Under the pieces are notes generated by a model. That model saw only the letters and a list, made by a program, of their open reading frames with translations, was not told the origin of the DNA and ran no database searches. A stretch of DNA of 63,313 nt, counting the filler, from Octopus bimaculoides (taxonomy: Eukaryota): assembly GCF_001194135.2 (NCBI RefSeq). It is 5 parts of 5 records of this genome, joined end to end, with 100 filler letters (N's around TTAATTAATTAA, not from the genome) between each part and the next. Parts side by side here need not be neighbours in the genome. Positions count along the whole stretch, not along the records: positions 6,619 to 35,287 come from NC_068981.1; 4 more parts are not named here. One strand, 5' to 3'. The translations under genes and the position numbers were made by a program. The stretch's first letter is position 1. Each line of letters opens with the position of its first letter. Shown piece after piece: positions 11,060 through 33,153 of this stretch.

Positions 11060-11110
<51 letters not shown>

Positions 11111-11665
11111 GCATCTTCTTTCAATTCTGTTTCCATTTCTTGCCGAGTGTCCTCCTGACACCTAGGGCAGAGAAACGTACTGTATACATTGGTAGGCCAT
11201 TAAAACAAACACACCAGATTGTTCATTTTGCACTTCCTGCATGGATAGTAAGCCAGGGATCATTCTTAAATAATTTTCAGTTCTTTTTTTGATTATTCCA
11301 AGTACTCCTACAATCACCAGTATTGTAACCGTCTTGAGATGCCACATCTTTTCGATTTCGATTAGCAAATCTTTATATTTTCTGAGCTTATCAAATTCTT
11401 TTACTGAGGTATTATGGTCACAGGGTATGCTCATGTCAATCAGTAAACAGACTTTATTGCTTTCGTCTTTCACAACAATATCTGGTTTATCTGCCTTGAT
11501 GGTCCGGTCTGTACATACTGGGAAGTCCCAAAGAATAGTTACATTTTCTCTCTCAGTTACAGTCTCAGGGTGGTATTTGTACCATTTGTCAGCAGTTTTG
11601 ATTATTATCCAATATAAATATTGGTCAACTCTGTCATGTCTTGATTTGTACTCTACAGGTGTCAA
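11060..11665 (-). mobile_element. R4/Dong-type non-LTR retrotransposon, 3' fragment (RLE domain) with (TAA)n tail
   Basis: The ORF at 11162-11665 reads EYKSRHDRV...KWY...ILWDFPVCTDRTIKADKPDIVV...CLLIDMSIP...KYKDL...IVGVLG, i.e. RHD plus the PD-(D/E)xK restriction-like endonuclease signature. A short 3' UTR is followed by (TAA)n at 11060-11110. Confidence 0.88.
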
Positions 11666-11698
11666 GGTAGTACTGAGCCAGAACAGATTAGCATCAAC

Positions 11699-12023
11699 AG
11701 GGTTATTTAAGGATGTTTAACGAAACCCCCTTGTTTCCAGAGGTGAATTATTCAAACCTCAAAGAATTCCTCTCAGCATATGGCTATGATGCGTCCCCAC
11801 TATTTTTGCTCGTGACCAGAGATGCACATATCGTCGGCCACTAACGGGCATGCTTAACGGGTTAAGGTCAAACAACTGACGAGCAAATCTGTGGTATTGA
11901 GCAGAATATTTAGTGTGGCCCATCTTTTATACCAAGACAAAACAATGTACATGATAACACTTCCAATCAGTTAAGATCAAAAGCCATGAGGGCCACTACC
12001 TGGTACTGCATGAGGGCGTTCAC
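11699..12023. mobile_element. Unclassified interspersed repeat between the RLE fragment and the second (TAA)n run; possibly the 5' end of the same element
   Basis: Non-coding segment bounded exactly by the RLE junction and the (TTA)n run at 12024-12105. I recall it as a common Octopus repeat but cannot verify that. There is no second copy in this window. Confidence 0.4.
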
Positions 12024-12105
<82 letters not shown>

Positions 12106-12289
12106 GTTCAGTAGTTTTATTTTTATAACGTGCTTTCACTTCACTACCGAGCGCAGCTCTGTGCGCTTTGGGTATGTGCTGTGGTTTGCTGTGATGCTCT
12201 TATGGTTACTGTATTGAAAGTGTTTTGCGTAGGATGTGTGCAGTGCCCAGTAGTGCAATTTTCTGTATGTTATATATATTTGTAAGTCC
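12024..12289 (-). mobile_element. R4/Dong-type element 3' end with (TAA)n tail (remainder in gap)
   Basis: The minus strand reads GLTNIYNIQKIALLGTAHILRKTLSIQ*, the typical RLE C-terminus. Its 3' UTR end tagtgaagtgaaagcacgttataaaaataaaactactgaac is near-identical to 27201-27240. Confidence 0.85.
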
Positions 12290-21363: not shown

Positions 21364-21756
21364 AATACATGCATACATACATACATACATACATACAGAC
21401 AGACAGACAAACAGACTGACAGAAAACGTGTATGGCCCATTGATAAGGAGTTTGCAAACCCAATGTCCAAGATGCACTTTTAGTTTCATACCTATTATTA
21501 TTGGAGCCACAGTGTCGCCTGGAGCAAAGTGTGGCTGAACTTGGGTTCTTGAGGGAGAGAATGCATCTCCTCATTCATGCACTGCAGCTGATCACGATAT
21601 CTAGAACAACAAAAGTCTTCACCATCTGCTTAACGTTGAAAGAATGATGAACAAAGTAAGATCCTTTCCTTTACAACCTTGCTACCAAGCAGGTAGCCGA
21701 TAAAAATTAACTTTAAATTAAAGAGAGAAAAAGAAAACAACATGCATTCAAACATA

Positions 21757-22130
21757 CTCCGTCGCTTACGACGACGAGGATTCCAGTTGATCCGATCAAC
21801 GGAACAGCCTGCTCGTGAAATTAACGTGCAAGTGGCTGAGCACTCCACAGACACGTGTACCCTTAACGTAGTTCTCGGAGATATTCAGCGTGACACAGTG
21901 TGACAAGGCTGGCCCTTTGAAATACAAGTACAACAGTAACAGGAAGTAAGAGTGAGAGAAAGTTGTGGTGAAAGAGTACAACAGGGTTCACCACCATCCC
22001 CTGCTGGAGCCTCGTGGAGCTTTAGGTGTTTTCACTCAATAAACACTCACAACGCCCGGTCTGGGAATCGAAACCGCGATCCTATGACCGCGAGTCCGCT
22101 TCCCCAACCACTGGGCCATTGCGCCTCCAC
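21757..22130 (-). mobile_element. tRNA-derived SINE, family B, full length
   Basis: Minus-strand head GGAGGCGCAATGGCCCAGTGGTT...GGTTTCGATTCCCAGACC (A and B boxes). About 375 bp, closely matching the copies at 23274 and 32051. Confidence 0.9.
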
Positions 22131-23273
22131 ATACATACATACATACACACATACATAATATATCTAAGGAGAACGTATGGAGAACTAATAATGAAAATTA
22201 CAGCTCTTACATCTAAGTTATAGATTTTCATTTGTATCTATTACCACAGGTGGACTAGGTTATACAACAACACATTTGCATAAAAGCCTAGGAATGCTGG
22301 GTTGTAGAGGGTGGGAGCTGCAAAAAAGAACAACCAAAATGAAACCAAGTAAGTGGTACTGAAAAAGTTTAAAAACTTCAAATGCATTAGATGATATATG
22401 TAGATTTGAAAATGATTTGCATAGTACTTTGTCAACAAAGGGGCTATAAGTGAAAACCGAAGAGGCCGTTTCTAACAAGCCATAAAACCATGGGAAAAGA
22501 TACCGTTGATAGGGGGATACATATAAGATGGCAGGGTATTGTTGGGAGCTTATAAGAAAAAAAATCCAGATGTGATCATGCTAAACAATAAGAGAAAGCT
22601 GCTTCCTAAACAGTACACTTGGTGAAATAACCTTGCTTTTATGCCTATTTATATCTTCAAAGTTGAATCAACATGAGACGGATGGAATTTCTTGGCTGGA
22701 TGATGTGTTTCTTTGCACGAGATATATTTCTATCTACGATTACGTGTGTGATTTCGGTGATATTTGATATATTTTACCTTTTATTTATTTATTTATTTTG
22801 GTAACCGGAAAGTGAAAAGACAACTACATATGTGTAATTACTTAAATTTTCAGTTTTTACAAAATATTCTTATTTTCAGTCGTTAGATTGCATCCATGCT
22901 GGAGCAACACATTGCAAGGTTAGATGTATATGCTTATGTCACTAATATGTGCTTTTTATACTTTAGCACCATATTGCTAAAATTTGAAGATCTGTTTCTA
23001 AGCAAAAAAAAAAAAAAATCCCCTGAAGTGATGTACAAATACTAAAAGTAGATTTAAAACTTGTGCCACAAAATTAGTTATGTTGGACACTTTCATGTTA
23101 AAAAGAAAGAAAAAAAAGATAAGAAAAAAAAAAGATCAAAGACGTTTTTCAGAATGCTGCTCAGTGTAATATATATTATTTTGGCTCTACTACAAGTTTT
23201 CTGTTTTTAATTCAGGCATCTTTATTCTACTCATTTACACAAAAGTCTATAAAACAACCGGTTGTATGATTGT

Positions 23274-23569
23274 TGTTGGCACTCCATCGCTTACGACGCC
23301 GAAGGTTCCAGTTGATCCGATCAACGGAACAGCCTGCACGCGAAATTAACGTGCAAGTGGCTGAGCACTCCACATACACGTGTACCCTTAACGTAGCTCT
23401 CGGGGGATATTCAGCGTGACACAGTGTGACAAGGCTGGCCCTGATGAATTACAGGTACAACAGAAACAGGAAGTAAGAGTGAGAGAAAGTTGTGGTGAAA
23501 GAGTACAGCAGGGTTCACCACCATCCCCTGTTGGAGCCTCGTGGAGCTTTTAGGTGTTTTCGCTCAATA
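23274..23569 (-). mobile_element. SINE family B (head lost in gap)
   Basis: Near-identical to 21757-22050. Confidence 0.88.
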
Positions 23570-24308: not shown

Positions 24309-24353
<45 letters not shown>

Positions 24354-24469
24354 TGTGTGCATGCGTGTGTGTGCGCGTGTGCCTGTGTGTGTATGTGTGT
24401 GTACATGCATGCATGCATGCGTGCATACATACGTACGTACGTTTTTATGTATGTACATATGTATGTATG

Positions 24470-24870
24470 TCATTATTCAGTTTATTTCAAGATTTCTTGC
24501 CAATAGAGAAAGAGTCGATTTCTAACCTAGATCCAAGGTTCCTTCTTTGGAATCTCAGCATCAACAACAAGATATTTTTGGATGTATGTATGTATGTATG
24601 TATGTATGTATGTATATATGAATACGCACAGATTTGTATTTTTTGTTTTATGTATGTCTTCTCATGCATATACCTCCATATCTAGACATGCTCATATATA
24701 CTTAAATGATAAACCTGCAAAGTTTTACAGATTTTTATAGTTTCAGTGATGGATTGGATCTGTATTCTTCGAATCAACTTTCTCCTTTCTGGTTTTGAGA
24801 AGCCTAATTTCTTAAGATTGGTATTTAGGCAGTGTGTTACATGTCCCAAGGCCCCAATAATTACAGGTAT
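24470..24870 (-). mobile_element. RLE non-LTR retrotransposon 3' fragment embedded in (CATA)n
   Basis: The minus strand reads IPVIIGALGHVTHCLNTNLKKLGFSKPERRKLIRRIQIQSITETIKICKT. The 3' UTR is colinear with 31790-32600. CATA-type repeats lie at both junctions. Confidence 0.87.
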
Positions 24871-25210
24871 GTAAGTATGCATGTATGTAAAATTATGCTT
24901 ATTAGTCTCAAGGTTCACGAGACCTTTGATCATTGTTTTGCTCTTTGGTCACACGATTGTAATCACTGGTCTGTGATATTCTGTTTCGACTATAATTGTG
25001 TTAAATAAGTTCCCAAAATGGGTTAAGTTTCTGCATTCTGACGAAAAAAGAAAATACAGCACTTTTTCCCACTTACCTTTGCTGCAAAGGAAGGTGTCAA
25101 TTTTTTTGTTGTTTCTTAAATATCAATCTACTTTTTTCCAAAATTGTTTTATATTCTTTAGAAAAGTACCGAAGGAAAGTTAATCTCTAAGCTATTTTTC
25201 AACAACCATG

Positions 25211-25243
<33 letters not shown>

Positions 25244-25984
25244 NNNNNNNNNNNNNNNNNNNNNNNNNNNNNNNNNNNNNNNNNNNNNNNNNNNNNNNNN
25301 NNNNNNNNNNNNNNNNNNNNNNNNNNNNNNNNNNNNNNNNNNNNNNNNNNNNNNNNNNNNNNNNNNNNNNNNNNNNNNNNNNNNNNNNNNNNNNNNNNNN
25401 NNNNNNNNNNNNNNNNNNNNNNNNNNNNNNNNNNNNNNNNNNNNNNNNNNNNNNNNNNNNNNNNNNNNNNNNNNNNNNNNNNNNNNNNNNNNNNNNNNNN
25501 NNNNNNNNNNNNNNNNNNNNNNNNNNNNNNNNNNNNNNNNNNNNNNNNNNNNNNNNNNNNNNNNNNNNNNNNNNNNNNNNNNNNNNNNNNNNNNNNNNNN
25601 NNNNNNNNNNNNNNNNNNNNNNNNNNNNNNNNNNNNNNNNNNNNNNNNNNNNNNNNNNNNNCACACACACACACACACACACACGCACACATTTAAGAAC
25701 ACGCACACTGTTAATGATAATAGTGAGACAAACTGGTGGAAGCAAGATAGCATATTTTTGAAAGTGCTGTTTCAATAACAATGACATCAATAAAAGAAAC
25801 AACAACAGCAAAAAAAAAAAAACGACAACGACGACGACGACCGGAAGCACATTCGAGTGGCCTCTTAACTTCATATTCAAACTAGGATGAGCAAACTATG
25901 TGTTGAGATGAATAACAATACTTTTGAACTCCCCCATTTTTCTTCTTCATATCAGTCTGCCTTAATGCGTAAACAGACTGAATA

Positions 25985-26597
25985 ATTAGTAATGGTGTCA
26001 AATTTTAGTACGAAGCCAGCAATTTCAGGAGAGGGGTCAGTCGATCGCATCAATGCTCAACTTGTACTTATTTTATCGATCCCAAAAGGATGAAAAGTAA
26101 AGTCGACCTCGGCGCAGTTTTAATTCAGAATATAAAGACGGATGAAATACCGCTATGCATTTTGCTTGGCCTGCTAACGATTCTGCCTGAGAATGAATAA
26201 TTAATAATAGTAACTGTTTCTAAGTTCGACGCAAAATCAACAATTTTGAGAGGAGGGGGTCTTGTCGATACCATCGTACCAGTACTTCACAGGTACTTTA
26301 TTTTCTCGATCAAAAGGATACATGTTACAGTTCATCTCAGCGGTATTTGAACTTAGATCGTAAAATGACGGAAGAAATGCTGCAATTGTCAGATGTATTA
26401 ACGGTACAATTTCGGGGAACGGGATAAGTCGACTGCATCGATCCCAGTGTTCAACTAGTATTCATTTTATCGATCCAGAAAGGATGAAATGCAAAGTCAA
26501 CCCCGGTGAAATTTGAATTCAGAACGTGAAGATGGACGAAACGCCACTAAACATTTTGTCCGGTGAGCTAAAGATTCTGCCAGCTCACCACCTTAAT
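25985..26597 (-). mobile_element. Tandem array of three family C SINEs
   Basis: Three successive minus-strand units (about 25990-26190, 26215-26400, 26405-26597), each with an atttgaactc/ttcag B-box complement and ttttatcgatcc...aaaggatgaaa. Confidence 0.8.
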
Positions 26598-26604
26598 AAT
26601 AATA

Positions 26605-27236
26605 TGGCTAAGAAGGAATATATTCACAGACACGACAGAGCTGGGACCTATATACACTGGAAGCTATGCCAACACTATGGAATAACAACAGAAAAAAGAT
26701 GGTATAAACACACGCCAGAAAAGGTCACAGAAAACGAGAAAGCAACCATACTCTGGGATATGCCAATACACACAGACAGAGAAATTAAGGCCAATAGACC
26801 AGATATAGTTGCCAAAGATCATGAAGGAAAAAAATGCTTTCTAATTGATGTATCAATACCAGCAGATGACAACGTTTCCCTAAANNNNNNNNNNNNNNNN
26901 NNNNNNNNNNNNNNNNNNNNNNNNNNNNNNNNNNNNNNNNNNNNNNNNNNNNNNNNNNNNNNNNNNNNNNNNNNNNNNNNNNNNNNNNNNNNNNNNNNNN
27001 NNNNNNNNNNNNNNNNNNNNNNNNNNNNNNNNNNNNNNNNNNNNNNNNNNNNNNNNNNNNNNNNNNNNNNNNNNNNNNNNNNNNNNNNNNNNNNNNNNNN
27101 NNNNNNNNNNNNNNNNNNNNNNNNNNNNNNNNNNNNNNNNNNNNNNNNNNNNNNNNNNNNNNNNNNNNNNNNNNNNNNNNNNNNNNNNNNNNNNNNNNNN
27201 TAGTGAAGTGAAAGCATGTTATAAAAATAAAACTAT

Positions 27237-27321
<85 letters not shown>
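26605..27321 (+). mobile_element. R4/Dong-type element, 5'-truncated, (TAA)n on both sides, spanning a gap
   Basis: AKKEYIHRHDRAGTYIHWKLC...RWYKHTPEKVTENEKATILWDMPIHTDREIKANRPDIVAKD...CFLIDVSIPADDN. The 3' UTR (27201-27240) matches 12106-12150. TAA runs occur at 26594-26603 and 27241-27321. Confidence 0.9.
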
Positions 27322-27323
<2 letters not shown>

Positions 27324-27630
27324 GGATTTTTAACATTCAGATTAACAAAGGATTTTAACATTTATACTGACAGATGGGATTTTAACATTCAAACTGACAG
27401 AGTAATAAAAGCTAAAAGGCCTGATTTATTAATAGTGGGCAAAGAGAATAGAAAGTGCCAGATAATTGATTTTACCGTCCTAAACGATGAGAAAGTCAAT
27501 ATGAGAAGTATAGAGAAAACAGCAAAGTACCAGAACCTAGCCATTGAGTTACAGAGGCTATGGAATGTGCGGGTCAAATGTATCCCTGTAGTTATAGGGG
27601 CATTAAGAACTAACGCAAAGACACATACAG
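27322..27630 (+). mobile_element. RLE fragment of a second subfamily
   Basis: WDFNIQTDRVIKAKRPDLLIV...CQIIDFTV...KYQNLAIELQRLWNVRVKCIPVVIGAL; starts directly after the (TAA)n run. Confidence 0.87.
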
Positions 27631-27639
27631 AACACCAGT

Positions 27640-28403
27640 GATTATGGATGTGGAGGTGTGACTCGAAGATTGACACAGAAGCATTTATATGCGCGGCACA
27701 TGAACAAGCGTTAAGGACGAACTATAGGAAGTGTAATTGACAACACAACCGAGGGCGACAAATGCAGACTATGTGGTGAGAAGGGTGAGGCGGTATGGCG
27801 CATTGTTAGTGAATGCCTGAAACTGGCATAACGTGATTGCAAAAGACGACATGACAATATGACAAGAATGATCCAATGGGAGCTCTGTGGAAATCATGGC
27901 CTACAAAGAGCAAAGACATGGTATGACCAAATCCCAGAAGGAGTTACCGAGAATGAGGACTGCAAAATCCTGTGGGATGCAATGATTCAGTGTAACCATC
28001 AGATCAGATATCGGAAAGGTGACATTGCTGTGGTGAACAAAAAAGAAAGAAAAACCTTGCATGATAATCGACATATGTCCCGGTGAAAACAGAATCAAAG
28101 AGAAAGAAGAAAAATTGAACATCTATGACGATTTGAAGTGGGAGATACGCAGGTTGAAGGTAATGGAGAGAGTAGACGGGATACCAGTAGTAATTGGTAC
28201 GCTTGATAGTATCAGCATTCAACTACCAACATGGCCGAAAAAGATTTAAAGATAGAAAACCTACAAAAATCATTATTGCTTGGAACGGTAAGAATTCGCA
28301 GGGTTCTAAAAGCATGATCAATAAACAAGTATCACCTTAGTCTGCTGGCTGTGGACAGCTGACACAGCAAAATAAGCTGAGCGTTTTCATCAAATAATAA
28401 TAA
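27640..28403 (+). mobile_element. RLE fragment of a third subfamily (CCHC knuckle plus RLE) with short TAA tail
   Basis: TEAFICAAHEQALRTNY...DKCRLCGEKGEAVWRIVSEC...RRHDN...WELCG...TWYDQIPEGVTENEDCKILWD...IPVVIGTL...LLLGT. Frameshifted; TAA repeats at 28394-28403. Confidence 0.87.
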
Positions 28404-28920
28404 AACTAATGAAAGGATATGAAGAAGAATTACGCAACAAGGGGCTACACGACCAATTCCATGTAGCCACAACAGAAGTTGCTGGAAAAAATAGGTGGGA
28501 TTAGCTGAAGAAAGGAACTCTAAAAAAAAGAGACCGAGAGCACTATACTGGTAGCGCAAGACCAATCTGTGGCTACGAACCGGCGGGTCAACCTTAGGAA
28601 TGCGCAAGTGTCACCGCTGTGTCGCATCTGTAATAGAGTGGATGAAGCCATTGCCCATATCACGAACGAATGCCCTAGACTTGCCCAAGACCACTACAAG
28701 TTGTGGCGACACAATCAGGTAGCGAAAGTACTACATTGGAAACTGTGCGAAAAGTAGGGGTTAGAGAAAGGTAAGACGTGGTATGAACACAAACCGCAGA
28801 GAGTGACGAAGTCGGAGACTAGCAAAATCCTCTGGGATTTCCCAATCCAAACAGATCAGGTGCTAGAGCATAACAGACCGGACTTGGTGGTGGTCGACAA
28901 GATACATCACATGCGATATA
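28404..28920 (+). mobile_element. RLE fragment of a fourth subfamily (CCHC plus start of RLE), 3'-truncated
   Basis: KGLHDQF...ETESTILVAQDQSVATN...CRICNRVDEAIAHITNECPRLAQDHYKLWRHNQVAKVLHWKLCEK*...WYEHKP...ILWDFPIQTDQVLEHNRPDLVVVDK. Confidence 0.88.
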
Positions 28921-29610
28921 TAGTATCTACACCTTCTGTGAATGCCTATCATTTCTTTTCCCTCCGAGTATTCGAAAATGTAGACATCCTCTTTATTCCA
29001 AAAACACTACAGTTTTCTCTGTTCGGACAGACAAAAGATCATCTCCACTAAATTCTAAAAACTTCATATCTACAATTTTCTGTGAAAAAATTGTAACTTC
29101 CTTTTCTTTCCGTTCCTTTTTCCACGAATATTCGAAAATGTAAACATCTTTTTTATTGTAAAAAAAAAAAAAAAGCACCACAGTTTTCTCTAAACGGACA
29201 TACAAACGAACACATCAAAAAATTTGGAAACTTTAATATCTCCAATTTTGCGCGAACATTTTGTCTTCCCTTCTTCCTTGACTAACAGAACATGTAAACA
29301 TGCTTTTTATTGTAACAACACAATTAAATGCACGATAAAACATTAAGGAAGTAAGCACCTGCCAATATATACATACTTCACAACTACAAAAACTGTAAAC
29401 CACTGCAAAACTTTTAAAAAGAAAAGAAAAATGCCAAAAGAAAAAGAAAAAGAAATTCAGAAATTCAAAAATTCAAAAATCCAACAAGGTGAACATCTCT
29501 TCCTCCTACTATTCCCAAAGACTGGAATATCTACAATTTCCTGTGAATATTTTAAATTTCCTTCAAAATAAAATAAGTTAGGAAACTTATATACCTACAG
29601 CTTTCGAACA
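28921..29610. repeat. Degenerate long-period tandem repeat of unknown origin
   Basis: The motif tatctacaattttctgtgaa recurs near 28924, 29067, 29237 and 29529, and tattcgaaaatgta(g/a)acatc...acagttttctct recurs in the first two units. Confidence 0.6.
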
Positions 29611-29894
29611 CACAAACGATTAGCTTTAAAAAAAATACCCTTAATATCTACGTATATTTTCGTTTAAACATATATTTACTGGGCATCTCTGAACGAAAAT
29701 ACACGGGATAAAATGTTAAGGGGTTAACTGAAAGGGCAAAACAATAAATAAATAAATAAATAAATAAATAAATAGCGAAACAAACCGGCGCCAATACACT
29801 AAGGAGAAATGAGAACAAAAACCACTGTAAGGTAAATGCCCAATTAGAGCCAAGAACCCTGATATATACTAAATTCTTACCCATTAGTGGCCGG

Positions 29895-30190
29895 CATGCT
29901 CTGGAAACTGAGTGAGTATACTCTTACTGCTCAAGATCAGCGTCTTCAAACTAGGTATTACCATTGTAATGTTCTGAAACATGGAAACAGCTCATTGTAT
30001 CGAGCATGCGTAGAATAACCAGAGACAATCGACTACATAATCCCTGGATGCGACCGATTAGCACACCAACAGAGTACATGCAGCAACATGACGACAGCTC
30101 TATACATTCACTAGTCAATATGTCGCACATATAACTTCCTTCACAAAGAGAATTGGTGGGAATATAAATCACCACAAGTTGTCTAGAATG
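29895..30190 (+). mobile_element. Highly decayed RLE-element fragment (CCHC region)
   Basis: Pieces ETE...TAQDQRLQTRYYHCNVLKHGNSSLYRACVE*PETIDYIIPGCD...TEYMQQHD match the pre-RLE zinc-knuckle region of the neighbouring elements. Confidence 0.6.
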
Positions 30191-30424
30191 TATATGTGCA
30201 ATTCCAAGTAAAACGGGCAGCTAATTAGTATGTAAAACTATTTAAAATACTTTATAATGTTGCTGTTATCTAAATTCTAGTGATGATGCAATCAGACACT
30301 TCACAATAGGAAAAGAGAAAGCAATTGAAAAATGCATATATTTGCATATACAATGCATATACTTGAATATACACACAAATACACAGATTTATACAAATAT
30401 ACATGCACCAATAAATACATGCAT

Positions 30425-30706
30425 CAATACATACATGCATGCATGCATTCACACATATATACATACATGCATACATACATACATACATACATACATACAT
30501 GCATACATACATACATACATACATATATCCACACATACACCCACACACCCACACATGCATACATACATACATGAGTAATACATACATACATAGACTCACG
30601 CATACACATACAAACATACATTCATACACACACATATGCATACATTCATACATACATACATGCATACATACATGCATACATACATACATACATACATACA
30701 TACATA
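30425..30706. repeat. (CATA)n compound microsatellite
   Basis: Visible CATA/CATG runs. Confidence 0.95.
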
Positions 30707-32600
30707 ACTAAACTCGTGTCACAAAAAAATATTAGAGTTGAATAAAGAAAATTTGAACTTCAGAACTCTCTGCATTCAATAAAACAGTGGCCCACAATAT
30801 GTTTGCTGTGCCAGTACTCATACCAATATTCGGGCTGCTTGATTGTACGCTTGATGAAACCCGAGCCATTGATGTGGAAACCCGGAAGATACTAACCAGT
30901 ACACATAATTTCCACATCAGCAGTGACGTAGACTGCTTCTACCTACAACAAAAACAAGGCAGCAGAAGTTTAACATCGATCCAGACTGCTTTTGAACATT
31001 CTATCATATCTCTTCGGCAACATCTATTAACCACCAAGTGTTGACGTGCATCCCTTGACTAAGTTTGCATACATGCGGCCGATAACACCATAAGACTTGG
31101 AAGGCAGCTCCTTGAGCAGTATTCTTTGTCTGATAACCTTAAATACATGCTCAAAAAAGTCGCGAGCGTATATCAGAAGGCCATGAATGGCTATGTTAGT
31201 AGAAAGCTCCGAGATGATAGTAACATTGATCATCAAAGCAGTCTACCATGGACCAACAATCGGATTACTACCACCCAATTTGAAGGGTATGTGTTTGCAA
31301 TCCGGAAACAGGAAATATCAACCAAATACCTGATACACAAAAGGGACTGAGATGCAGGAAAAGCAACAAAATGTGACAACCGATGCAAACTTTGTAGAGT
31401 TAACAGCGAAGATATCACCCACATCATAAGCAATTGCCCGAAGATATCATCATTGTATTATCTACCAGACAAGATATTGTAGTTAGGACACTGTACAACA
31501 AGATCCGTCAGAAGGATAACTCCGAGGACAAAGAAATAAGAACCCACCGTATGGTGGAAGGCACAGCCACTGATAATAAAAAGAAATACTGATGGAATGT
31601 CCCAGTGAAAACTTCAATAAAATGTAAACACAATAGACCTGACATAATGATTTGGAATAGAGAAGAGAAAGTGTATAGTTGTGGAAATCAGCTGTCCAGC
31701 GGATGTTAACATAAAGCGAAAAAGAAAATATCTACGCTAAACTGTTGAGAAATTTGCAGTTGCTCTATCCAAATAACATGTTCAGGTTTATACCTTTAAT
31801 TATTGGAGCACTGGGATATGTAACACACTGCTCAAATACCAATCTTGAGAAATTAGGCTTCTCAAAACTAGAGAAAGCTGATTCGAAGGCTACAGATCCA
31901 CTCTATCACTGAAACTAAATAAAAATCTGTAAAACTTTCCAGAGGTTTATCATTCAAGCATATATGAGCATGTCTAGATATGCAAGTATATGCATGAGAA
32001 GACATATATAAAATAAAGCATACAAATCTGCACATGTACATAATTTTTTTGTTGGCTCTCCGTCGCTTACGACGTCGAAGGTTCCAGTTGATCCGATCAA
32101 CGGAACAGCCTGCTCGTGAAATTAACGTGCAAGTGGCTGAGCACTCCACAGACACGTGTATCCTTAACGTAGTTCTCGGGGATATTCAGCTGACACAATT
32201 TGACAAGGCTGACCCTTTGAATTACAGGCACAACAGAAACAGGAAGTAAGTGTGAGAGAAAGTTGTGGTGAAAGACTACAGCAGGTTTCACCACCATCCC
32301 CTGCCAGAGCCTCGTCGAGCTTTTAGGGGTTTTCGATCAATAAACACTGACAATGCCCTGTCTGGGAATCGAAACCGCGATCCTATGACCGCGAGTCCGC
32401 TGCGCTAACCACTGGGCCATTGCGCCTCCACTGTACATAATTACATACATGCATACATACATATATACATACATACATACATACATACAAAAATATCCTG
32501 TTGATGTTGTTGAAACTCCAATGAAGGAGCCTTGGATCTAAGTTAGGAATCGGCTCTTTCTCCATTGGCATGAAATCATGAAATAAAACTGAATAATGAC
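30707..32600 (+). mobile_element. RLE non-LTR retrotransposon, 5'-truncated (RT thumb, CCHC, RLE, 3' UTR), embedded in (CATA)n and interrupted by a SINE
   Basis: KI*TSELSAFNKTVAHNMFAVPVL...IDVETRKILT...HISSDVDCFY..., FEGYVFAIRKQEISTKY, CKLCRVNSEDITHIISNCP, KHNRPDIMIW...VEISCPADVN, IPLIIGALG. It begins right after (CATA)n at 30706 and ends aataatga-CATA near 32600. Confidence 0.9.
32051..32431 (-). mobile_element. SINE family B inserted in the 3' UTR of the CATA-type RLE element
   Basis: Full-length copy. The sequences on either side rejoin into the uninterrupted 3' UTR seen at 24470-24700. Confidence 0.88.
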
Positions 32601-33153
32601 ATACATTCATACATGCATTCATACATGCATGCATGCATACCCACTACATGAGTGTACGTTGATTCTCACGCTCGCTTACATATGTGCACACATTTATATA
32701 ACCATAGACCTCAACAACTGTCTCGGCTTAAACAAAATAGACTTGTCACTTTATTAACGACCGGTTTGAATTCGGCAAAGAAAAAAGAAAAAACTAAAAT
32801 AAATCCCGAAGAAATATATGCATATAATAAGTAAATACATGCTAACATAAATCTATACTGTAATTCTCTATTGCTCTGGGAACAATAACGTTATCAAACA
32901 TTACATATTCATGTATCAAATTTAAGATGGCCGTTCGTTACTTTCCACTCGTTTAATTTGAAGCTTTATGGCATATTCAGTTGTCAACCTTGTCACAGAA
33001 TAATGGAATTAATTACCAAGGTGGACATGTCATAACATAGTTGACTTAGCTAATAAGTATGTAGCAACAGAGAATAGGTTTGGTTATAAGATACACCCCA
33101 CCCAGTCTTAATGAATGGCACGAAGGAAAGAGAAGGAGAGAGAGGGAGAGAAC

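What the first reader, a model, noticed from the sequence alone, without database searches (positions are those of the whole stretch)
24440..32640. An RLE retrotransposon family that sits specifically in (CATA)n, alongside (TAA)n-specific relatives
Seen: two independent copies of one RLE family (24470-24870 on the minus strand, 30707-32600 on the plus strand) are truncated at very different 5' points. Both have CATA-type repeats at both junctions, and both end at the same aataatga-CATA boundary. Their 3' UTR also carries an internal (CATA)n block. The other intact-ended RLE copies (11060, 12024, 26605, 27640) end in (TAA)n instead. Established: Dong-type R4-clade elements target TAA microsatellites through their restriction-like endonuclease, and target switches between simple repeats are known in non-LTR elements. 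Inference: this genome hosts sister RLE lineages with different microsatellite specificities, one recognising a CATA/TATG tetranucleotide. I do not know of that specificity having been described. Such elements could also help seed the abundant (CATA)n tracts.
Basis: partly seen in the sequence, partly recalled or inferred. Interest (0 to 1): 0.72.

Follow-up and report, generated by a model that had tools for sequence, protein, structure and literature searches.

The report
Octopus LINE family that targets CATA microsatellites
Two dead copies of an octopus jumping gene (a LINE with a restriction-like endonuclease) each sit inside a CATA simple repeat, and relatives in other marine animals sit inside CATA or TTAC repeats in the same way, so this is a repeat-targeting lineage of a known kind with target sequences I did not find described.

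Summary
Copy A (24470-24867, minus) and copy B (30707-32599, plus) are about 87% identical. They are 5'-truncated at different points, end at the same ...GAAATAAAACTGAATAATGA|CATA boundary, carry an internal (CATA)n block in the 3'UTR, and have CATA-type repeats on the sense strand at both junctions. B also holds a later SINE insertion.

Two further fragments of related families in the window (D at 21422, C at 22160) also start directly after CATA tracts. Only about 2% of window positions have such an upstream flank.

The host is an octopus. Relatives from other assemblies repeat the pattern. Five families are tied to (CATA)n (L002, L007, L018, L023, L031) and six loci to (TTAC)n (L006, L019, L024, L025/L026, L029, L030). 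At 12 of 13 evaluable 5' junctions the repeat matches the 3' tail.

The best reading is an R2-superfamily, R4/Dong-like LINE clade that inserts by target-primed reverse transcription into tetranucleotide microsatellites in one orientation, with switches between CATA and TTAC.

The (TAA)n-ending fragments in the window are real but share only about 30% amino-acid identity, so they are not sisters. Recognition "through the endonuclease" and seeding of CATA tracts were not tested. No genome-wide octopus census or Repbase/Dfam check was possible. I rate it a new variant of a known kind.

The parts
24470..24867 (-). Copy A: 5'-truncated dead copy. It holds the last ~40 codons of the ORF plus the 3'UTR. 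The 3' end is at 24470 (TCATTATT on the + strand).
24868..24890 (-). 5' flanking CATA-type repeat of copy A (sense strand TACATACATGCATACTTACATAC). The ATAC at the junction is microhomology with the element.
24310..24469 (-). 3' flanking compound microsatellite of copy A. On the sense strand it reads CATACATACATATGTACATACATA, then (CGTA)n, (CATG)n, (CA)n.
24582..24620 (-). Internal (CATA)n block in the 3'UTR of copy A.
30411..30706 (+). 5' flanking compound (CATA)n tract of copy B (296 bp).
30707..32599 (+). Copy B: 5'-truncated dead copy. It runs from the end of the RT domain through the CCHC knuckle and RLE domain (conceptual ORF 30757-31955, with stops and frameshifts) to the 3'UTR, and ends ...GAAATAAAACTGAATAATGA.
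32045..32431 (-). Later insertion of a tRNA-derived SINE into the 3'UTR of B. The target-site duplication TGTACATAAT lies at 32035-32044 and 32432-32441.
32442..32489 (+). Internal (CATA)n block in the 3'UTR of copy B.
32600..32640 (+). 3' flanking CATA-type repeat of copy B (CATACATTCATACATGCATTCATACATGCATGCATGCATAC).
21365..21421 (+). (ATAC)8(AGAC)n tract directly upstream of fragment D.
21422..21757 (+). Fragment D: 5'-truncated copy of a related RLE family (C-terminus and 3'UTR). It ends ...GAAAACAA|CATGCATTCAAACATAC.
22130..22158 (+). (CATA)7 between the SINE (21758-22129) and fragment C. It is the remainder of the tract shared by D's 3' end and C's 5' end.
22160..22392 (+). Fragment C: 5'-truncated copy of a third related family, 77.5% identical in DNA to L004. 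Its 3' end was not identified.
26604..28925 (+). Comparison set: a head-to-tail stack of distantly related Dong-like RLE fragments in a (TAA)n locus. (AAT)28 lies at 27239-27322 and (TAA)3 at about 28393. Assembly gap at 26885-27200.
11060..12289 (-). Comparison set: two minus-strand Dong-like copies that end in (TAA)17 (11060-11110) and (TAA)27 (12024-12105).

Best explanation
A and B are old, dead, 5'-truncated copies of one family of non-LTR retrotransposon of the R2 superfamily. Its build is R4/Dong-like: a single ORF with reverse transcriptase, a CCHC knuckle and a C-terminal restriction-like endonuclease.

The family inserts by target-primed reverse transcription into (CATA)n.(TATG)n microsatellites, always with CATA on its sense strand. 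The steps below are inferred, not shown:
1. The protein nicks the TATG strand at a fixed position of the repeat unit.
2. The RNA 3' end, ...AAUGA followed by CAUA repeats, pairs with the nicked strand, and reverse transcription starts there. This would give the constant ...AATGA|CATA boundary and phase.
3. Reverse transcription often stops early. The cDNA end is then joined to the upstream part of the same microsatellite, by microhomology in A (ATAC). This leaves CATA on both sides.

The family belongs to a clade spread over several marine-invertebrate genomes. Its members use either (CATA)n or (TTAC)n, with at least one recent switch. The window also holds more distant Dong-like elements that use (TAA)n.
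For: **Shown in the window**
- A and B are the same family, with the same 3' boundary, different 5' truncation points, unrelated outer flanks, and CATA on both sides.
- Fragments C and D of related families also begin right after CATA tracts, forming a D-CATA-C stack.
- The background frequency of such a flank is about 2%.
- Protein features are a CCHC knuckle and RLE motifs (zf-RVT and HSDR_N_2 hints; invariant C..C...H....C, PD, E and K columns). The RT domain is present in relatives, and the nearest solved structures are R2 proteins (E = 6e-24).
- The host is an octopus (P0001, O. bimaculoides, 67% aa).

**Shown in relatives with CATA**
- L018: (CATA)22 | truncated copy | (CATA)19 ... (CATA)22 | second copy.
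- L023: (ATAC)8 | about 3.9-kb copy | (ACAT)28.
- L031: copies separated by (CATA)7.
- L007: a 3' (CATA)31.
- L002: ends ...AATGAA|CATACATA(CAGA)n.

**Shown in relatives with TTAC**
- TTAC on both sides in L006, L019, L024 and L030, at the 3' end in L025/L026, and at the 5' end in L029.

**Across all copies**
- The repeat is always on the sense strand, and the 3' junction always starts in phase |CATA (7 of 7).
- The tree groups B with CATA-tailed L002 (97% bootstrap). P0015 (CATA) and P0017 (TTAC) are sisters at 66% aa identity (97% bootstrap).

**From the literature**
- Microsatellite-specific LINEs are an established kind: Dong TAA, Togen TG, some HERO families, Waldo ACAY (PMC3812793, PMC4640811, PMC7998251).
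Against: - Only two copies of the octopus family itself (plus C and D) could be examined.
- One relative (L007) has a 5' junction that is probably not in CATA. Its alignment to L030 is weak and another retroelement abuts it.
- The only other octopus copy retrieved (L001) is an internal fragment broken at both ends, with no repeats.
- CATA tracts are common in this genome, and 4-5 tracts in the window carry no element, so some association could be secondary.
- The nicking step, the RNA-DNA pairing and the protein determinant are inferred, not shown.
- Clade placement (R4/Dong versus HERO) was not tested against reference sequences.
Confidence: 0.8

Rival explanations
1. Tail only. (CATA)n is a self-encoded 3' tail that the reverse transcriptase makes or extends, as with the simple-repeat tails of many LINEs. 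Insertion sites are otherwise unspecific, and the CATA at the 5' junctions is coincidence in a CATA-rich genome.
For: All copies carry the repeat at the 3' end in one phase, which a templated tail would also give. L007 has a long 3' tail and probably no CATA at its 5' end. CATA tracts are frequent in the window.
Against: 4 of 4 window 5' junctions and 8 of 9 in relatives abut the same repeat as the 3' end, against about 2% expected per junction. In B, L019 and L030 the upstream tract (296, 300 and 351 bp) is far longer than the 3' tract (42, 18 and 8 bp), the opposite of what a tail would give.
Confidence: 0.06
2. Targeting without a sequence-specific protein. The endonuclease nicks loosely, and insertion succeeds mainly where the RNA's (CAUA)n 3' end can anneal to the nicked strand. 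The specificity would then be carried by the RNA tail, and a target switch needs only a change of tail.
For: The tail and the target are always the same repeat. A pair at 66% aa identity (P0015 and P0017) differs in repeat. The internal CATA blocks in the A/B and L031 UTRs show that tails are easily captured.
Against: The phase is constant at the 3' junction and the orientation is strict. R2-superfamily proteins are known to bind their targets through N-terminal Myb-like domains (PMC7998251). Sequence alone cannot separate this from protein recognition. This rival concerns only the determinant and is compatible with the main explanation.
Confidence: 0.2
3. Secondary association. Elements and CATA tracts merely accumulate together in TE-rich, low-recombination DNA, or the flanking tracts grew after insertion from CATA-like seeds in or next to the element.
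For: The region is a TE graveyard with nested LINEs and SINEs. The element itself carries an internal CATA block that could expand. Waldo-A/B near CA repeats in Drosophila were explained in this way (PMC3812793).
Against: The repeat abuts the exact element ends on both sides. Orientation is uniform. The same pattern recurs in unrelated genomes and with a different repeat (TTAC) in sister families. A's 5' repeat is upstream of a truncation point inside the ORF, where no CATA seed exists in B.
Confidence: 0.05

Closest known systems
Dong (R4 clade; Bombyx mori, Anopheles, Biomphalaria, ostracods)
   Same: An RLE-bearing single-ORF LINE that inserts into a microsatellite, is flanked by it on both sides, and stacks head to tail in such tracts. 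Dong-R4 LINEs are reported as abundant and recently active in octopus genomes (PMC3812793, PMC7998251, PMC13282606).
   Different: Dong's target is (TAA)n, whereas here it is the tetranucleotide (CATA)n, or (TTAC)n in sister families. The window's own TAA-type fragments are only about 30% identical to this family in the RLE region. No HDV-like ribozyme was detected at the 5' ends of full-length relatives.
Waldo (R1 clade; WaldoAg1/2, WaldoFs1)
   Same: The target repeat overlaps. ACAY repeats include ACAT, which is a rotation of CATA (PMC3812793).
   Different: Waldo carries an N-terminal APE-type endonuclease and belongs to the R1 clade. This family has a C-terminal restriction-like endonuclease, and its nearest solved structures are R2 proteins. 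The shared target is convergence, not kinship.
Togen (NeSL-related, fish) and microsatellite-specific HERO families (leech)
   Same: RLE-bearing LINEs with microsatellite targets: Togen uses (TG)n, and some HERO families use microsatellites (PMC4640811).
   Different: The repeat units differ. Kinship to HERO or NeSL was not tested because no reference sequences were at hand.
R2
   Same: The same superfamily architecture (RT, CCHC, C-terminal RLE), strict site and orientation specificity, and frequent 5' truncation. R2 proteins are the best PDB matches.
   Different: R2 targets a unique site in 28S rDNA and has N-terminal zinc fingers. No zinc-finger or Myb Pfam hit was found in the N-terminal part of relatives.

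Membership tests
RLE-bearing non-LTR retrotransposons (R2 superfamily) | Reverse transcriptase domain | tested here: met
   Relatives P0015 and P0020 hit PF00078 (E = 7e-24 and 3e-16), and R2 proteins are the best PDB hits. Copy B itself keeps only the stretch after the RT palm, which is homologous to residues 160-409 of P0003.
RLE-bearing non-LTR retrotransposons (R2 superfamily) | CCHC knuckle followed by a C-terminal PD-(D/E)xK restriction-like endonuclease | tested here: met
   B reads CDNRCKLCRVNSEDITHIISNC ... HNRPDIMIW ... VVEISCPADVN ... K. These columns are invariant or nearly so in alignments A1 and A4. There are weak Pfam hints, both below the curated cut-offs: zf-RVT and HSDR_N_2.
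RLE-bearing non-LTR retrotransposons (R2 superfamily) | No APE endonuclease at the N-terminus | tested here: met
   The N-terminal ORF parts of L006 and L007 give no Pfam hit, and in particular no Exo_endo_phos hit.
R4/Dong clade | Placement with R4 and Dong in an RT phylogeny | not testable with these tools
   No Repbase, Dfam or reference Dong/R4/Rex6/HERO/NeSL sequences were available. 'Dong-R4' is only how the octopus literature labels abundant RLE LINEs (PMC13282606, PMC8967140).
R4/Dong clade | Single long ORF | tested here: met
   P0018 and P0099 read through the region where L006 and L007 are split. The splits in L006 and L007 lie at different codons, so they are inactivating frameshifts.
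R4/Dong clade | N-terminal Myb/SANT-like domain without zinc fingers (PMC7998251) | tested here: inconclusive
   Pfam finds nothing in the N-terminal parts. A conserved W..YEL..DLY.CY...GYM.R.K..W motif is visible. The published domain was seen only by HHpred, and the folding tool does not accept these sequences.
R4/Dong clade | HDV-like self-cleaving ribozyme at the 5' end (PMC3774820) | tested here: inconclusive
   There is no Rfam ribozyme hit at the 5' ends of L006, L018, L023 or L024. Such ribozymes are often missed by Rfam models. A shared 5' motif GTCG..ACGGAYGT exists.
Dong (sensu stricto) | Insertion into (TAA)n | tested here: not met
   A, B, C and D and the relatives use (CATA)n or (TTAC)n. 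TAA is used only by the distant fragments at 11060-12289 and 26604-28925.
Target-specific LINE (Kojima's criterion: the same sequence type in more than 20% of flanks, PMC4494074) | Cognate repeat at both junctions in a large share of copies | tested here: met
   12 of 13 evaluable 5' junctions and all evaluable 3' junctions meet it. The sample is small and only 2-4 copies are from the octopus.
Waldo (R1 clade) | APE endonuclease and R1-clade RT | tested here: not met
   The family has a C-terminal RLE and R2-like RT.

The most novel reading that the evidence does not exclude
These copies belong to a widespread, so far undescribed clade of R2-superfamily LINEs in marine invertebrates. The clade targets tetranucleotide microsatellites and has switched between (CATA)n and (TTAC)n more than once. 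One switch lies between elements still 66% identical in protein (P0015 and P0017). That pair would be a natural system for locating what sets the DNA target of an RLE retrotransposon.
Probability: 0.45. Interest if true: 0.65.

Novelty: new variant of a known kind. Interest (0 to 1): 0.5.

Why it matters
Site-specific RLE retrotransposons such as R2 are the model for target-primed reverse transcription. From my own knowledge, not checked here, they are also being developed as tools for inserting genes at chosen sites. How they change targets in nature is known from few cases.

A clade with several closely related members that use different simple repeats would allow comparison or domain swaps to find the target-reading part. 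The CATA/TTAC pair at 66% identity is the closest example found here.

For octopus genomics, it explains part of the association between the abundant 'Dong-R4' LINEs and tetranucleotide repeats. It also warns that CATA tracts are insertion hot spots and stacks of nested elements.

Tried and rejected
- **Other octopus copies:** Only P0001/L001 was retrievable, and it is an internal fragment with no junctions. P0082 has no contig on record. Neither profile search returned any further protein named as octopus (the C-terminal search listed only P0001 and P0082; the best 120 of 1274 RT hits listed none).
- **P0070, listed on 97 contigs:** It turned out to be one degraded locus seen in many Tara samples and is uninformative.
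- **Short contigs:** L003, L004, L005, L020-L022, L027 and L028 end before the element's 3' end.
- **Viral and prokaryotic collections:** No relatives.
- **Shared 3' motif:** I tested whether the last 20 nt (AAATAAAACT..TGAATAA) are shared between the CATA family and the TAA family. The match is not significant (4 of 200 shuffles reach it).
- **Copy A extending past its 5' repeat:** tblastn HSPs run through the repeat, but the DNA score equals the shuffle mean, so this is rejected.
- **Programmed frameshift between two ORFs:** Rejected, because the breaks are at different codons and other members are continuous.
- **HDV-like ribozyme by Rfam:** Nothing found.
- **Literature:** Searches for a CATA/ACAT-specific RLE element found nothing.

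Full report
**Observation**

The piece (6619-35287) is TE-rich animal DNA. BLASTN of 30707-32640 against it shows that B 31790-32030 and 32445-32623 match 24870-24629 and 24623-24446 on the minus strand at 87% and 86%. The 400 bp between them in B is a tRNA-derived SINE, with other copies at 21757-22163 and 23270-23569. In B it lies at 32045-32431 and is flanked by the duplication TGTACATAAT.

- Both copies end at ...GAAAT(A)AAACTGAATAATGA followed by CATACAT....
- Both carry an internal (CATA)n block about 110 nt before the end.
- A starts at ATACCTGTAATTATTGG, inside the ORF. B starts about 1.1 kb further upstream, at the end of the RT domain.
- The outer flanks are unrelated.

A is preceded by 23 bp of TACA-type repeat, with ATAC shared between the repeat and the element. 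B is preceded by a 296-bp compound (CATA)n.

tblastn HSPs appeared to run past A's repeat. However, the DNA upstream scores exactly at the shuffle mean against B, so the repeat marks a real junction.

Neither assembly gap touches A or B. One gap lies inside a (CA)n tract. The other interrupts a TAA-type copy, and its 316 N equal the length expected for one continuous copy.

**What the element is**

A three-frame translation of B can be stitched into a 379-394 aa C-terminal protein. It has a CCHC knuckle (CDNRCKLCRVNSEDITHIISNC) and a restriction-like endonuclease core (HNRPDIMIW...VVEISCPADVN...K).
- Pfam gives only weak hints, zf-RVT and HSDR_N_2.
- The best database hit is an Octopus bimaculoides gene model (P0001, 67% identity), so the host is an octopus.
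- Longer relatives carry RVT_1, and their best solved-structure matches are R2 proteins (E = 6e-24).
- P0018 and P0099 read continuously through the region where L006 and L007 are split at different codons. The intact element therefore has a single ORF of about 1150 aa.

Octopus genome papers report abundant, partly young 'Dong-R4' LINEs but do not analyse their targets (PMC13282606, PMC8967140).

**More junctions in the window**

Two further 5'-truncated fragments of related families lie in tandem:

(ATAC)8(AGAC)n | D 21422-21740 | CATGCATTCAAACATAC [SINE] (CATA)7 | C 22160-

All four window 5' junctions therefore abut CATA-type repeats, always with CATA on the element's sense strand. Only 1.9% of positions in the piece have a 16-bp upstream flank that is at least 85% CATA-like on either strand. 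Four or five CATA tracts in the piece carry no element, so free targets exist.

**Relatives elsewhere**

No octopus DNA collection could be searched, so I fetched contigs that encode homologues. The host species are unknown. The contigs come from holobiont or metagenome assemblies.

| Locus (protein) | Repeat | 5' junction | 3' junction |
|---|---|---|---|
| L002 (P0005, 57% aa to B) | CATA | not in contig | ...AATGAA\|CATACATA(CAGA)n |
| L007 (P0015) | CATA | probably ordinary sequence next to another retroelement | ...TATGAAA\|(CATA)31 |
| L018 (P0158), copy 1 | CATA | (CATA)22 | (CATA)19, then a 210-bp insert |
| L018, copy 2 | CATA | (CATA)22 | beyond the locus |
| L023 | CATA | (ATAC)8 | (ACAT)28 (about 3.9-kb copy) |
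| L031 (P0016) | CATA | copies separated by (CATA)7 | copies separated by (CATA)7 |
| L006 (P0020, full length) | TTAC | 86 bp | 50 bp |
| L019 (P0112) | TTAC | 300 bp | 18 bp |
| L024 | TTAC | present | present |
| L030 (P0017) | TTAC | 351 bp | 8 bp |
| L025, L026 | TTAC | not in contig | present |
| L029 | TTAC | present | not reached |

Counting the window, 12 of 13 evaluable 5' junctions carry the same repeat as the 3' end. The orientation is uniform. The CATA 3' junction always starts in the phase |CATA (7 of 7).

In B, L019 and L030 the upstream tract is much longer than the downstream one. This is the opposite of what a self-made tail would give.

**Relationships**

In a neighbour-joining tree of the C-terminal 235 aa, B groups with L002, P0038 and P0048 (97% bootstrap). 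L023 plus P0003 is sister to that group (68%), and L018 is basal. The TTAC families and L007 form the poorly resolved remainder.

P0015 (CATA) and P0017 (TTAC) are sisters (97%) at 66% identity. This is the closest pair with different repeats.

The window's TAA-type fragments are about 53% identical to each other. They are only 27-36% identical to this clade over 80-130 aa. They are co-resident distant relatives, not sisters.

**Mechanism**

The anatomy fits target-primed reverse transcription into the microsatellite:
- the repeat on both sides;
- one orientation;
- a fixed 3' phase;
- variable 5' truncation with microhomology;
- head-to-tail stacks.

The following are inferred rather than shown:
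- a nick at a fixed position of the TATG strand;
- priming aided by pairing with the CAUA-ending RNA;
- which part of the protein reads the target.

[quoted passage not shown] I could not confirm that domain here. Rfam found no HDV-like ribozyme at four full-length 5' ends. Three of those 5' ends share a GTCG..ACGGAYGT start directly after the repeat.

The internal CATA block of A and B may be a fossil junction, formed when a very short downstream copy was co-transcribed with a full-length element. This is speculation.

**Comparison with the known, and novelty**

Microsatellite-specific LINEs are established:

| Family | Target | Endonuclease type | Source |
|---|---|---|---|
| Dong | (TAA)n | RLE | PMC3812793, PMC7998251 |
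| Togen | (TG)n | RLE | PMC4640811 |
| some HERO families | microsatellites | RLE | PMC4640811 |
| Kibi | (TC)n | APE | PMC3812793 |
| Koshi | (TTC)n | APE | PMC3812793 |
| Mino | (AC)n | APE | PMC3812793 |
| Waldo | ACAY | APE | PMC3812793 |
| crocodilian Tx1 | (TTCC)n/(TTTC)n | APE | PMC4494074 |

CATA-type repeats are thus a known target only for the unrelated APE-type Waldo. I found no paper that describes an RLE element specific for (CATA)n or (TTAC)n. Repbase Reports and Dfam, where such notes usually appear, could not be consulted.

I therefore rate this a new variant of a known kind, with moderate interest.

**Limits**

- Only two copies of the octopus family itself were examined, plus two related fragments.
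- Placement in R4/Dong versus HERO is untested.
- The hosts of the relatives are unknown.

Noticed in passing
window 32045-32431; 21758-22129; 23270-23569: Three copies of one tRNA-derived SINE, all on the minus strand. One is inside B's 3'UTR with the duplication TGTACATAAT. One is inside the CATA tract between fragments D and C and lacks the last ~15 nt of the SINE tail. One runs into an assembly gap.
   Followed up: partly
window 26595-28925: A (TAA)n locus holds a head-to-tail stack of at least four Dong-like RLE fragments, separated by (AAT)28 and (TAA)3. This is the TAA counterpart of the D-CATA-C stack.
   Followed up: partly
window 27321-27401: A 27-bp unit (ATGGGATTTTAACATTCAAACTGACAG) is present three times. 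It is a triplication of the coding stretch 'WDFNIQTD', exactly at the 5' end of a truncated TAA-type copy. It may be a stutter of template switching at 5' joining.
   Followed up: no
L023:40, L024:37, L030:2187: Full-length relatives of three families begin, directly after the microsatellite, with a shared motif GTCG..ACGGAYGT. It is a candidate conserved 5'-terminal RNA element. Rfam gives no ribozyme hit.
   Followed up: partly
L031 1-10978: A tandem array with a period of about 3093 bp. Each unit is one 5'-truncated copy with an intact 761-aa ORF, a 15-bp minisatellite (ATATTGTCTGGGTCT)n in the 3'UTR, and (CATA)7. One unit has (CATA)50 inside the UTR. The assembler flagged the contig as circular.
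   Followed up: no
L018 6262-6472: A 210-bp unrelated insert sits between two perfect CATA tracts, (CATA)19 and (CATA)22, downstream of a LINE copy. It may be another element that uses CATA tracts.
   Followed up: no
L001 6001-6837 (O. bimaculoides CM046628.1): The annotated gene LOC106878562 (P0001) is a decayed internal fragment of this LINE family. It is embedded among sequences that resemble C2H2 zinc-finger pseudogenes.
   Followed up: partly
window 21397-21421 and L002 986-1028: The compound repeat (CATA)n(CAGA)n occurs both upstream of fragment D and as the tail of the relative L002.
   Followed up: no
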